From the NCBI GenBank assembly GCA_053919585.1, contig CM132827.1: a DNA stretch of 64,000 nucleotides; one strand, given 5' to 3'. Positions 12,580-16,737 of the stretch are shown here, piece after piece. The stretch is from Euprymna scolopes. Its lineage: Eukaryota. The notes under the pieces were generated by a model that was not told the DNA's origin, did no database searches, and saw only the letters and a program-made list of their open reading frames with translations. The position numbers were made by a program, and so were the translations under genes. Within the stretch, counting starts at the first letter, position 1, and each line of letters opens with the position of its first letter.

Positions 12580-13548
12580 GTGATGGCAGACGATACTATA
12601 CTCTACGGGTCCGGTGATAGCGATGCAGAAGTTGAAAAAAACCATGATGCTGCCCTTGTGGCACTTCTAGAAAGGTGCCGCAAACAAGGAGTAAAACTCA
12701 ACCCTAATAAGTTCAACTTCAAAAAAACCTCTGTTAGCTACATGGGACATACTTTCAGTGCACAAGGGTTGGCACCAGATTCGGATAAAGTCAAAGCAAT
12801 ATCAAAGATGCAATGCCCTACGGTTATCCAAGGCATTCAGCGATTACGAGGAGTCGTAAACTACCTCGCCAAGTTTGCACCCAAACTCAGTACAGAATGT
12901 GAACCACTGAGACGCTTACTGAACAAGGAATCTGTCTTTGACTGGCTGCCGCAACACGAAACAGCATTTATTCAGATTAAAAAGCTCATCACTGAAGCCC
13001 CTATTCTTCATTATTATGACCTCAATAAGGAGGTCTCACTTGAATGTGACAGCTTGGAAGTCGGTCTAGGGGCAGTCCTAACACAGGAAGGACATCCCAT
13101 TACATATGCATCCCGAGCACTCAGAAAAACGGAGCGAAACTATGCCCAGATTGAGAAAGAGTGTCTTGCCATCGTATTCGTCACAGAACGTTTTGAACAA
13201 TACATTCTCGGTAAAGAGAAAATCAAAGTATTCTCCGATCATAAACCACCGGAGACAATACTCGCAAAACCCATTCATGTGAGCCCAAAGAGACTCGAGC
13301 GGATGCGGCTAAGGCTTCACAAATACTCCTTAGATGTGAGATACAAGCCAGGACCCCAAATGTACATAAGCGATACCCTGTCTTGTGCCTCACTACCTAC
13401 TCATGAAGTCACGACAGAAGATAACTGCACCATATTCCAACTGCAAGAACAGGGAACTCACAAGAGACTTGGAAAACATCAATATGGAAAACAGCCTCTT
13501 TGTTACAGACCATCGCATCTTACAGATTCGAGAAGAGACCAGTCATGA
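12580..13548 (+). pseudogene. Gypsy RT C-terminus and RNase H
   Basis: MADD, CDSLEVGLGAVL, YASRAL, NYAQIEKECLAIVF, SDHKP motifs. Confidence 0.92.
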
Positions 13549-14605: not shown

Positions 14606-15721
14606 CCTACGAAGAAGCAATCGATGTACTGGATGTTACATATATAAAACTCAAAAATAAAATATTTTCTAGATACCTACTTGCAACTCACTGACAAGAA
14701 TCAGGCGAAACACTGGAGCCTAAAGAGCCTTCGGATACTGGGCAAAGATTGCAACTTCTACCCAATGACAGCATTAAAAACCCAAGAGTAACACATTTTG
14801 GACGCCTTCATTAATGGCTTACATAATGCTCAAGTAATGCAACATCTTTTTGAAAATAAAACTCTTACACTTAGAACAGCTTATGAGCAAGCCTATACCG
14901 TCAAATGTGCCATACAGCAGTCTACTTCTTATTTAAAGCCAGACACAATGGGCACTGCGCTAAACCCACCTGTTCCTACTGCCCCCCTCATGATGATAAT
15001 CTGACAAAGTTTCAAGAACAGTCAGTCACTGTCACTTTAATAAAGGACATCTGCTGTTTTTGTGGCTTATCTAAACATCTACAAGTTTCATGCCCTGCTA
15101 GAAATACTCGTTGTCATAAATGTAAAAAAACGTGGCCATTGTTCAAAGATATACAAATCTTCTAAAATTTGATACAAAGTCACGATCAAAATATATCTAC
15201 AACTTAAGCCACCACTCCAGACTGCCTTTAGAAACTTATTGTAAAAGTAAAAATTAACACAAGATCTGTGAATGCTTTGCTTGATACTGGAAGGTCGGAA
15301 AATTTTATTAAAGAAAGCTTGGTAAAAAACAAAAAATTGTATCTCGGCTCCAACTCCAGCAAAGTAACAATGACAAACGCTTCATTGTCTGCACAAGTAA
15401 GTAGTTATTGTTTAGTGGACTTATTATTTAATGACGTCTCCTGTAAAACCAGTAAATTATCTGTAATGAAATACCTTTGTTGCGATATAATACTGGGACA
15501 CAATTTTTGAAACAACACTCACAAATTGAAATTCCATTTGGCAGTTCAATGCCCGTATTAAAAATTTGTGGATTGGTGACAGCAAAAATCCAGTACCTGT
15601 CACTTTTTGAAAACTGTAAACACATAGCAGTGAGAAGTAGACGTTTTTCTTATAATGATAAAAAAAATTATTAACATGGAGGGACTGAAAAAGATATTGC
15701 AAAATCAGCAATTACAACAAT

Positions 15722-16110
15722 TACGGACACTTGGCCTTCGGGAAAAGATCAAAGTGTAGTATCTGTTCTTCAGATGCTGCACTTAAGATAATTTGTACCA
15801 GTCAATGGAGGGGAAACCCTCTATACTGGGACAATTATTATTTTTGGTAACCAGAGTGCCCCCTTTTTGCCTACTTTTAGGGGAGCTGGTTTTTACCTCA
15901 CATTAAAAACGGCCTTGTGCCTAATTTGCTCGGTGGGGGAGCAAATAAATACCATCTGTTCTTCAGATGCTGCACTTCTATTTCTTGTTCTCTTTCGGTG
16001 GAGGAGAAATCCTTCACGACTGAGACAATTTTTATTTTTGTACGTTTTCTCCACGTTAAAAAACGACCCTGGTGTCTAACTCTGTCCCGTGGGGAGGCAT
16101 TGTAAATAGG
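15722..16110 (+). ncRNA. U2 snRNA-derived dimeric insertion with 9-bp TSD (candidate SINE or retrocopy of a U2 variant)
   Basis: GGCCTT...AAGATCAAAGTGTAGTATCTGTTCTT (15733-15770) matches the invertebrate U2 5' core as I recall it, with correct spacing; Sm-type ATTTTTG at 15840 and 16034; TSD TACAACAAT at 15713-15721 and 16111-16119; host pol frame (KDIAKSAITT|IDQNIPLVVE) is restored on removal. Confidence 0.8.
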
Positions 16111-16737
16111 TACAACAATAGACCAGAATATTCCTCTTGTTGTTGAAATGGATGTGTCAGACTGTGATATTGCTGCTTCTTTGAGACAAGCTAATTGCCC
16201 TGTGGCTTTTTTTTTCAAGGACCCTCCCACGGGCTGAACCACAACATCCCGCAATTGAAAAGGAAGCCTACACCATAGTCGATGCATTAAGAAAAACTTA
16301 TTACTGACCAAAAATCAGTTACTTTTATGTTTAACTCTAAGACTACAAACAAAATAAAAAATGAGAAAATAGCGAGGTGGAGAATTGAACATATTTCTCT
16401 TTCGACGTCAGCTACCGACCCGGCAGAGAGAACTTAACAGCTGATACACTGTTCAGAGTATGCTGTATGGCATCAAGTGAGGACGAACTCCACACACTAC
16501 ATAACAATCTCTGTAACCCGGGAATTACTCAAATGATTCATGCTGTGAGGAATAGAAACTCTCTTTTCTCAGTGAAGGAGGTGAAAGGAATTACAAATTC
16601 ATGTCGAACGTATGCTGAAATAAAGCCTCGATTTTATAAACCCAAAACTGGCGTTTTAATAAAAGCAACACAACCGTTCAAAAGACTAAATCTTGATTTT
16701 AAAGGACCACTACCAAGTAAAACAAGGAACCGATATA

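What the first reader, a model, noticed from the sequence alone, without database searches (positions are those of the whole stretch)
15722..16110. Mobile, dimeric U2-snRNA-derived RNA element with a 9-bp TSD (candidate new SINE or long U2 variant)
Seen in sequence: a 389-bp insert is flanked by exact TACAACAAT duplications, and removing it restores the Gypsy pol frame (KDIAKSAITT-IDQNIPLVVE). The insert starts about 10 nt before GGCCTT, the position of U2 +1. It contains AAGATCAAAGTGTAGTATCTGTTCTT, which includes the GUAGUA branch-point recognition sequence. Further U2-like traces follow: CCTCTAT...GGACAAT, an Sm-type ATTTTTG, and CTCCACG...CGACC(C)TGGT. It comprises two diverged units (about 15761-15953 and 15954-16110) that share an exact 24-mer. 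It has no TIRs and no poly(A). Established knowledge: snRNA-derived SINEs are rare (crocodilian SINEU from U1/U2), and ordinary U2 pseudogenes are colinear copies. Inference: an Alu-like dimer built from U2, or a retrocopy of an unusual ~390-nt U2 paralog that could bind Sm proteins.
Basis: partly seen in the sequence, partly recalled or inferred. Interest (0 to 1): 0.9.

Follow-up and report, generated by a model that had tools for sequence, protein, structure and literature searches.

The report
U2-headed SINE dimer, LINE-dependent
The 389-bp insert is one copy of a very abundant mollusc retroposon: only its first ~40 letters come from U2 snRNA, its two body units resemble the ends of U2-homing LINEs, and it shows how snRNA "heads" and SINE dimers can arise.

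Summary
A 389-bp insert (15722-16110) lies between exact TACAACAAT repeats. It carries a U2-like core and two units that share an exact 24-mer.

Only about 41 nt (15730-15770, U2 nt 8-48) are U2-derived. Neither unit body is detectably U2, so this is not a long U2 paralog.

The element belongs to a family with at least 25,000 monomers (head + unit B) and at least 7,000 composites in this 5.9-Gb genome. It is also very abundant in two other organisms.

The genome's own U2 array holds full-length L1/Tx1-type LINEs. These carry the same 47-nt U2 leader, a similar first few bases after it, and a 3' tail with the same box and fold as unit A.

The internal unit junction (..AAATACC|ATCTGTTCTT) falls within one base of the U2 site published for Keno and Utopia. 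The dimer is therefore best read as an A-type element that homed into the U2-derived head of a B-type element. The composite was then retroposed as one unit: a sister copy on another chromosome shares its unique 8-nt 5' extension.

This scan has already met the family on other DNA of this genome, and earlier follow-ups reached similar readings. It is a SINEU-like variant outside crocodilians.

The parts
15713..15721 (+). Left copy of the 9-bp target-site duplication TACAACAAT.
   Evidence: Exact direct repeat D3; sequence.
15722..15729 (+). 8-nt 5' extension (T+ACGGACA) that is not U2-like. Only one other copy in the genome shares it (L002/L122, C17:60504527-60504912).
   Evidence: The pattern ACGGACACTTGGCCTTCGGG has only 2 exact places in 5.9 Gb. 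The two copies are 98.45% identical over 387 nt and have different flanks.
15730..15770 (+). U2 snRNA-derived head (U2 nt 8-48). It includes a degenerate stem-loop I and the GUAGUA branch-point recognition sequence (15756-15761).
   Evidence: 87.8% identity over 41 nt to the genome's own U2. Rfam U2 alignment. Family members reach 51-58 bits, above the gathering score of 46.
15761..15770 (+). ATCTGTTCTT (U2 nt 39-48), first copy of the internal 10-bp duplication.
   Evidence: Start of direct repeat D2. Published Keno/Utopia 3' flanks begin at U2 nt 39 (PMC4640811).
15771..15953 (+). Unit A body. It begins CAGATGCTGC (the LINE 5' UTRs begin CAGTGC or CAGCTGC) and ends in an A-type tail.
   Evidence: Modules mapped. 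LINE 5' junctions.
15911..15953 (+). A-type 3' tail: box hairpin GGCCTTGTGCC (15911-15921), terminal 8-bp stem-loop (15924-15946) and single-stranded AAATACC (15947-15953).
   Evidence: The box is shared with both U2-array LINE tails (z = 5.0 and 9.0 against shuffles). Unit A, LINE family 1 and LINE family 2 are predicted to fold in the same layout.
15954..15963 (+). Second copy of ATCTGTTCTT. The junction ..AAATACC|ATCTGTTCTT marks where unit A was inserted into the head of the B element.
   Evidence: 117 of 166 A-type tails sampled are followed by ATCTGTTC. This junction type occurs 7,289 times genome-wide.
15964..16110 (+). Unit B body and tail (..GGCATTGTAAATAGG). This is the body of the abundant monomer family (head + B).
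   Evidence: The head-to-B junction occurs 25,131 times genome-wide. A and B are homologous throughout; A has a 39-nt extra segment.
16111..16119 (+). Right copy of the TSD TACAACAAT. Its first three letters (TAC) are also the terminal triplet specific to the B subfamily.
   Evidence: Triplet association: GCATA tails give 38 TAC and 0 AAC; GCATT tails give 15 AAC and 6 TAC. The TSD begins immediately after AATAGG in 19 of 22 cases.
16112..16304 (+). Downstream host sequence: a decayed RNase H-like stretch of an LTR-retroelement pol, with stops and a frameshift.
   Evidence: Translation. PF17919 E 8e-4 on the piece 16212-16304.

Best explanation
The insert is a retroposed copy of a composite ('dimeric') member of a very abundant, non-autonomous, SINE-like retroposon family in a mollusc genome.

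Anatomy. A family member is a head of about 47 nt copied from the 5' end of U2 snRNA, followed by a non-coding body whose 3' tail has no poly(A).

Origin of the head. The head is not a promoter-bearing small RNA that a SINE picked up. It is the leader that U2-homing, L1/Tx1-type (Keno-like) LINEs carry. Those LINEs sit directly after U2 nt 1-47 and, inside the U2 array, can be co-transcribed with that leader.

Relation to the LINEs. The short elements keep three LINE features: the leader, the first bases of the LINE 5' UTR, and a LINE-type tail. That tail is a box hairpin, then a terminal stem-loop, then about 7 unpaired nt. Presumably this lets the LINE reverse transcriptase copy them by target-primed reverse transcription.

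Origin of the dimer. A-type units go almost exclusively into U2-head sequence, mostly at U2 nt 38/39, which is the published Keno/Utopia site. Resident U2-headed elements are therefore their main landing pads. An A unit landed in the head of a head+B monomer, duplicated ATCTGTTCTT, and produced head+A+B.

Origin of this copy. That composite was transcribed and inserted as one piece through the B tail into a decayed LTR-retroelement pol. It made the 9-bp TSD, which begins with the TAC that matches the element's 3' terminus.

Shown: family membership, copy numbers, the LINEs in the U2 array with the same leader and tail box, the junction statistics, and the sister copy.

Inferred: which LINE mobilises B, how the element is transcribed, and the homology-guided 5' joining.
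For: Family and mobility:
- An own-genome search gives many copies with different flanks and TSDs of 8-25 bp.
- Head-to-B junctions number 25,131, head-to-A junctions 3,616, and A-tail-to-B junctions 7,289.
- In DNA runs of three organisms, depth over the element is 1e5-1e6 against 1e2-1e3 on the flanks.

Head:
- The genuine U2 (199 nt, Rfam 161 bits) forms a 764-bp tandem array on C9.
- The element's head is 87.8% identical to U2 nt 9-49.
- Family members pass the Rfam U2 gathering score through the head alone.

Partner LINEs:
- Two LINE families lie in the U2 array directly after U2 nt 1-47. ORF1 has zf-CCHC; ORF2 has APE endonuclease, RT and zf-RVT. ORF2 resembles human L1 ORF2p at E 9e-64.
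- Two LINE leaders carry the GGTCAAG variant found in SINE heads rather than the array's GGCTAAG.
- A LINE-like copy outside the array keeps the full leader.
- The tail box is shared with unit A (z = 5-9), and the predicted tail fold has the same layout.

Homing:
- 117 of 166 A-type tails abut ATCTGTTC and at least 13 abut other positions in the head.
- Utopia's downstream U2 starts at nt 39, and its 3' flank is stated to be identical to Keno's (PMC4640811).
- Composites always end in B at the 3' side.
- B units of dimers are scattered among monomer B units on a tree: 10 changes for 11 dimers, against a shuffled mean of 10.2.

Unit insertion of this copy: only L002 shares the 5' extension ACGGACAC, and it is 98.45% identical.
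Against: - The direct partner of unit B was not found. The B tail does not significantly match the two LINE tails (p = 0.16-0.32) and does not fold in the same way. Its link to them runs through its homology with unit A.
- The LINE insertions examined join U2 at nt 1 (family 1; three 99%-identical copies that may be one event) and at nt 22 (family 2), not at nt 39.
- No A-type unit was found in a genuine U2 gene (0 hits). About 265 would be expected if U2 genes were hit as often as B heads. The target may therefore include SINE/LINE-specific bases after nt 48, or such insertions may be purged from the array.
- Placement of the LINEs in the Tx1/Keno clade was not tested by phylogeny.
- PolyA RNA reads cover the element on both strands about equally. 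83% run on into unlike sequence and there are no defined starts. No unit-length transcript is shown.
- The B-unit tree is poorly resolved.
Confidence: 0.8

Rival explanations
1. Alu-like dimer of two U2-derived monomers: both units descend from whole U2 RNAs and keep stem IIb, the Sm site and the 3' stem-loops.
For: A GAAA-loop hairpin followed by ATTTTTG(G/T) occurs in both units, in the same order as stem IIb and the Sm site in U2. Global alignment of unit A with the U2 body is borderline (p about 0.06). Rfam aligns the hairpin to stem IIb.
Against: Rfam gives unit 1 only 20.7 bits and does not hit unit 2. Unit B against the U2 body gives p = 0.13-0.66. Profile HMMs of 100 A and 55 B bodies find no hit in the U2 body. 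The 3' parts match LINE tails instead. Unit 2 lacks U2 nt 1-38.
Confidence: 0.07
2. The dimer arose in one reverse-transcription event by template switching: RT jumped from a B RNA to an A RNA. Alternatively it arose by unequal crossing-over between neighbouring elements. Neither route involves site-specific insertion.
For: Template switching is documented for L1-type RTs and was invoked for the 5' additions in SINEU (PMC4494074). The shared 24-mer could support recombination. Long tandem arrays of A units exist.
Against: The switch point would have to coincide repeatedly with U2 nt 38/39, the published Keno/Utopia nick site (117 of 166 junctions; PMC4640811). End-to-end jumps should instead join at RNA 5' ends. 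A and B share only 77% column identity, so the dimer is not a recent duplication.
Confidence: 0.1
3. Retrocopy, or source gene, of an unusually long functional U2 paralog (~390 nt) that assembles with Sm proteins.
For: The branch-point recognition sequence is intact, and Sm-like U-rich sites are present in both units.
Against: The family has tens of thousands of copies in variable unit architectures. The element sits inside a decayed retroelement pol with a TSD and has no U2 upstream region. It scores below the Rfam gathering score. RNA reads are two-stranded passenger reads with no defined ends.
Confidence: 0.01

Closest known systems
SINEU (crocodilian SINEs with U1/U2-derived heads; Kojima 2015, PMC4494074)
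   Same: Both are short non-autonomous retroposons with a U2-derived 5' head. Both have dimeric and composite subfamilies. In both, the partner is inferred to be a Tx1-type LINE, some of which carry the same snRNA-derived 5' end. Neither has a recognisable internal promoter, and both contain internal oligo-T runs.
   Different: Here there is no poly(A) tail; all SINEU have one. The head is exactly the LINE leader (U2 nt 1-47/48) and ends at the LINE's 5' junction. The tail box and fold are shared with LINEs that still sit in the U2 array; no LINE sharing the SINEU-1 tail was found. A-type units home into U2 heads rather than into a Mariner element. The host is a mollusc, and copy number is in the tens of thousands.
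Keno (Tx1-clade, APE-type LINE specific for U2 snRNA genes; Kojima and Fujiwara 2004, as cited in PMC4640811 and PMC4494074)
   Same: The LINEs found here have an APE endonuclease, RT and a zinc-binding motif. They lie in U2 genes. The unit junctions of the short elements begin at the same U2 position as Keno and Utopia 3' flanks (nt 39).
   Different: Keno is reported from vertebrates, lancelet and cnidarians, not from molluscs. Clade membership was not tested here. The two independent LINE insertions examined join U2 at nt 1 and nt 22.
Utopia (restriction-like-endonuclease LINE that targets U2)
   Same: It uses the same U2 target position and can insert in tandem within U2 genes.
   Different: Utopia encodes a PD-(D/E)xK endonuclease. 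The LINEs here have an APE-type endonuclease.
Alu (dimeric 7SL-derived SINE)
   Same: Both are two-unit SINEs that propagate as a unit.
   Different: Alu's two arms are both small-RNA-derived monomers, and it has a Pol III promoter and an A-tail. Here only the head is snRNA-derived, and the second unit was added by insertion into the head.
Ordinary U2 retropseudogenes and L1-U2 chimeras
   Same: They contain U2 5' sequence and are flanked by TSDs.
   Different: Those are collinear or truncated single copies, usually with A-tails. This is a high-copy family with a constant non-U2 body.

Membership tests
SINEU | Short (<500 bp) non-coding retroposon, multi-copy, flanked by TSDs | tested here: met
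   The insert is 389 bp with a 9-bp TSD. Independent TSDs of 8-25 bp occur at other copies. There are at least 25,000 copies.
SINEU | 5' head derived from U1 or U2 snRNA | tested here: met
   87.8% identity over 41 nt to the genome's own U2. Family members score 51-58 bits on Rfam U2.
SINEU | 3' poly(A) tail (all described SINEU have one) | tested here: not met
   The element ends ..GTAAATAGG(TAC). A-type units end ..AAATACC.
SINEU | Sequence relationship to the crocodilian SINEU-1/-2/-3 consensus sequences | not testable with these tools
   Repbase and Dfam are not available here. The literature search found no SINEU outside crocodilians.
SINE in the strict sense (Pol III retroposon) | Internal Pol III promoter from tRNA, 7SL or 5S | tested here: not met
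   Rfam finds only U2 in the element. U2 genes use an external Pol II promoter (established knowledge). T5 runs lie inside both units.
Non-autonomous partner of a stringent-type LINE | 3' tail shared with an autonomous LINE in the same genome | tested here: inconclusive
   Met for unit A: the box GGCCTTGTGCCTAATTT and the same fold layout. Not shown directly for unit B, the outermost tail of this copy (p = 0.16-0.32). B is homologous to A.
Keno / Tx1 clade (applies to the partner LINEs) | APE-type endonuclease plus RT, inserted in U2 snRNA genes | tested here: met
   Pfam Exo_endo_phos, RVT_1 and zf-RVT. The LINEs sit directly after U2 nt 1-47 in the C9 array.
Keno / Tx1 clade (applies to the partner LINEs) | RT phylogeny places the element in the Tx1 clade with Keno | not tested
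   Only similarity to L1 ORF2p was shown (E 9e-64). No reference Tx1 sequences were at hand.
Keno / Tx1 clade (applies to the partner LINEs) | 3' junction at U2 nt 39 | tested here: inconclusive
   The LINE copies join at nt 1 and nt 22. The short A-type units join at nt 39 in 117 of 166 cases.
U2 snRNA gene or paralog | Reaches the Rfam RF00004 gathering score over the full model, with an Sm site and stem-loops III and IV | tested here: not met
   20.7 bits against 46, with low posterior probabilities in the 3' half. The genuine gene scores 161 bits.
Retrozyme / hammerhead-bearing tandem retroelement | Self-cleaving ribozyme in each unit | tested here: not met
   No ribozyme family appears at E <= 10 on either strand.

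The most novel reading that the evidence does not exclude
The snRNA 'head' of this SINE class is not a promoter module. It is the partner LINE's own target site, carried along as a leader. It would act as a homology arm for 5' joining and, once dispersed in more than 30,000 copies, as a decoy landing pad. About 22% of B elements have been hit by an A-type unit, yet none of the roughly 1,200 genuine U2 genes shows such a hit. If so, the SINE heads divert U2-homing retroelements away from an essential gene array.
Probability: 0.3. Interest if true: 0.75.

Novelty: new variant of a known kind. Interest (0 to 1): 0.55.

Why it matters
SINEs with snRNA heads have been described only from crocodilians. 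Their origin and their transcription were left open there (PMC4494074).

Here the short elements and full-length LINEs with the same U2 leader and tail box sit in one genome. The LINEs are still inside the U2 gene array. This gives a concrete origin for such heads: the leader of a target-specific LINE.

It also gives a mechanism for SINE dimers and multimers, namely homing into the heads of resident copies.

The system is young and abundant enough to test. Copies are 88-99% alike and the family is present in at least three organisms. For genome annotators, it also explains why U2 covariance models will report thousands of false 'U2' hits in these genomes.

Tried and rejected
- Whole-genome Rfam U2 search: failed twice. 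Pattern searches replaced it.
- U2 origin of the bodies: rejected as unsupported by pairwise alignments with shuffles, by profile HMMs and by Rfam.
- Hammerhead or retrozyme reading of the tandem units: no ribozyme hit.
- Single dimeric master as the sole origin of all dimers: not supported. Dimer B units are scattered on the tree and include both the GCATA/TAC and GCATT/AAC subfamilies.
- Purely in-situ origin of this particular copy: disfavoured by the sister copy that shares the 5' extension.
- A-type units inside genuine U2 genes: none found.
- SINE master with a pristine U2 5' end behind a U2 promoter: only a LINE-like copy (L127) and a U2 variant were found.
- Empty-site check in paralogous copies of the host repeat: the left flank is a repeat of about 83% identity whose similarity ends near 15675.
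- Literature search for U2-headed SINEs in molluscs or cephalopods: nothing found.
- RNA reads: no sign of an autonomous strand-specific transcript.

Full report
**1. What is there**

The insert runs from 15722 to 16110 (389 bp), between two exact copies of TACAACAAT at 15713-15721 and 16111-16119. It has no inverted repeats and no A-tail. The exact 24-mer ATCTGTTCTTCAGATGCTGCACTT starts two homologous units at 15761 and 15954. These units share 77% column identity, and unit A carries a 39-nt extra segment.

The reading frames of the flanks are in phase across the insert. The downstream piece gives a weak RT_RNaseH_2 match (E 8e-4). The host sequence is therefore a decayed LTR-retroelement pol. 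The pieces were searched separately and were not joined.

**2. How much of it is U2**

The genome's genuine U2 is 199 nt and scores 161 bits on Rfam. It lies in a tandem array with a 764-bp period on contig C9, with at least 1,181 pattern matches.

The element matches U2 nt 9-49 at 87.8%. Rfam scores the first unit at only 20.7 bits, below the gathering score of 46, and does not report the second unit. Other family members reach 51-58 bits, but the head carries that score and the rest aligns through large deletions.

The unit bodies do not resemble the genuine U2 body above chance:
- Pairwise alignments give p = 0.06-0.66.
- Profile HMMs built from 100 A units and 55 B units find nothing in the U2 body.

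The first 8 nt of the insert (TACGGACA) are not U2-like either. Only about 41 nt (15730-15770) are demonstrably U2.

**3. It is one copy of a large family**

The own-genome search returned many copies. Nine full-length dimers are 89-98% identical and have different flanks and TSDs.

The architectures found are:
- head+B, a monomer of about 195 bp;
- head+A+B;
- head+A+C+B;
- longer arrays such as head+A+A+A....

Genome-wide junction counts, allowing up to 2 mismatches in 35 nt, are:

| Junction | Count |
|---|---|
| head to B | 25,131 |
| head to A | 3,616 |
| A-type tail to B | 7,289 |

In DNA runs of three organisms, depth over the element is 1e5-1e6 against 1e2-1e3 on the flanks. Run labels point to a mollusc.

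B-type 3' ends read ..GTAAATAGG followed by TAC or AAC. That triplet goes with an internal diagnostic base: GCATA tails give 38 TAC and 0 AAC, while GCATT tails give 15 AAC and 6 TAC. Yet the triplet is part of the TSD in 19 of 22 clear cases. This suggests that the target is chosen to match the RNA's 3' end, or that each subfamily uses an endonuclease with its own nick site. TSDs are 8-25 bp long.

**4. The partner**

This step followed leads from earlier notes of this scan.

Gaps in the periodicity of the U2 array led to full-length LINEs that start directly after U2 nt 1-47. ORF1 has a zinc knuckle. ORF2 has an APE endonuclease, RT and zf-RVT, and resembles human L1 ORF2p at E 9e-64. Two families were found, 74% identical to each other in the ORF2 region.

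The LINEs and the short elements share four features:
- After the leader the LINEs begin CAGTGC or CAGCTGC, and the short elements begin CAGATGCTGC.
- Two LINE leaders carry the GGTCAAG variant typical of SINE heads, not the array's GGCTAAG. The leader therefore travels with the LINE RNA.
- A LINE-like copy on another chromosome keeps the whole leader.
- Both LINE tails contain the box GGCCTT(T)GTGCCTAA.TTG that unit A carries (z = 5.0 and 9.0). All three fold into the same layout: box hairpin, terminal stem-loop, then 7 unpaired nt ending AAATAC(C/A) or AAATAAA.

Unit B's tail is a diverged homolog of A's tail. It does not match these two LINEs directly, so B's own partner remains unidentified.

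**5. Why a dimer**

The published 3' flank of the U2-targeting LINEs Utopia and Keno begins at U2 nt 39 (PMC4640811). The internal junction of the insert..AAATACC|ATCTGTTCTT (15953/15954), falls at that position to within one base.

Among 166 A-type tails sampled, 117 are followed by ATCTGTTC. At least 13 more are followed by other positions of the head. Composites always carry B at the 3' end and A- or C-type units between the head and B.

The simplest reading is that A-type elements home into U2 sequence, and the dispersed heads of resident elements are by far the commonest such sequence. Each hit duplicates U2 nt 39-47/48 and leaves a single head upstream. A single head is expected if the new cDNA's head pairs with the resident head.

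On a tree, B units of dimers are scattered among monomer B units: 10 changes for 11 dimers, against a shuffled mean of 10.2. They include both tail subfamilies. Composites have therefore formed repeatedly.

No A-type unit was found in a genuine U2 gene. About 265 would be expected at the rate seen for B heads. Either such hits are removed from the array, or recognition extends into the bases after nt 48.

**6. This copy**

Only one other place in the genome, C17:60504527-60504912, shares the 8-nt extension ACGGACAC ahead of the head. It is a head+A+B element, 98.45% identical, with different flanks.

The composite was therefore transcribed and retroposed as one unit. The window's 9-bp TSD belongs to that event. 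The start of the TSD (TAC) fits the B-type terminal triplet.

**7. Expression**

PolyA RNA reads cover the element at similar depth on both strands. 83% of them continue into unrelated sequence, and no preferred starts or ends appear. This looks like passenger transcription of many copies. It is not evidence of an autonomous RNA, and how masters are transcribed remains open.

**8. Comparison and novelty**

The closest described kind is SINEU, from crocodilians. SINEU have U1/U2 heads, composite subfamilies and Tx1-type partners, some of which carry the same snRNA-derived 5' ends (PMC4494074).

The differences here are:
- no poly(A) tail;
- the head equals the LINE leader;
- the tail box is shared with LINEs still resident in U2 genes;
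- A-type units home into heads;
- the host is a mollusc;
- copy number is in the tens of thousands.

The held literature shows no such family outside crocodilians. Repbase and Dfam could not be checked.

This scan has already met the family in other windows of this genome, and earlier follow-ups reached similar readings. This report re-tested them independently. It adds the B-unit tree, the junction statistics, the covariation of the terminal triplet with the TSD, the tail folds and the sister copy.

Noticed in passing
L052, L078, L079, L100, L101 (G000:C9:168.86-168.97 Mb): The genuine U2 snRNA genes form a tandem array with a 764-bp period and at least 1,181 pattern matches. About 7-kb full-length LINEs of two families interrupt it. 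Three family-1 copies are 99% identical with identical junctions, as if one insertion had been spread by array homogenisation.
   Followed up: partly
L036, L041, L043, L044: A further U2-headed repeat family has a different body (it begins ACTACATGCTGTACTTATG). Heads and partial heads are repeated in tandem, so more than one lineage of U2-headed elements exists in this genome.
   Followed up: no
L080, L084, L088, L092, L095, L099: Head+A2 copies (TCTGTTCTGCAGATG variant, tail ..GGGGAAGCAAATAAATACA) share similar flanks on both sides (..AAATAGAAAAGAGG..). They therefore seem to be parts of a larger composite repeat, not independent insertions.
   Followed up: no
L009, L011 heads (e.g. L011:1505-1525): In some subfamilies stem-loop I of the U2 head has become a perfect 6-bp stem with a UUCG tetraloop (CTTGGCCTTCGGGCCAAG). 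In the window copy this hairpin is degenerate (..GGGAAAAG).
   Followed up: no
window 12580-13548 (+): An open 322-aa frame carries the RT C-terminus and RNase H-like domains of an LTR retroelement (PF17919, E 1e-29). It lies 2 kb upstream of the decayed RNase H-like stretch that holds the insert, so two retroelement pol fragments lie close together.
   Followed up: partly
window 15440-15675: The sequence left of the insert belongs to a repeat with several hundred copies at 81-85% identity. Its similarity stops about 46 bp before the insertion site, so the pol-like frame upstream of the insert is only about 14 codons long.
   Followed up: partly
window 15807-15822 and 16000-16017: A GAAA-loop hairpin is kept in both units with a compensatory change (GGG/CCC in unit A, GGA/TCC in unit B). 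The tail box hairpin also changes compensatorily between A (GGC/GCC) and B (GAC/GTC).
   Followed up: partly
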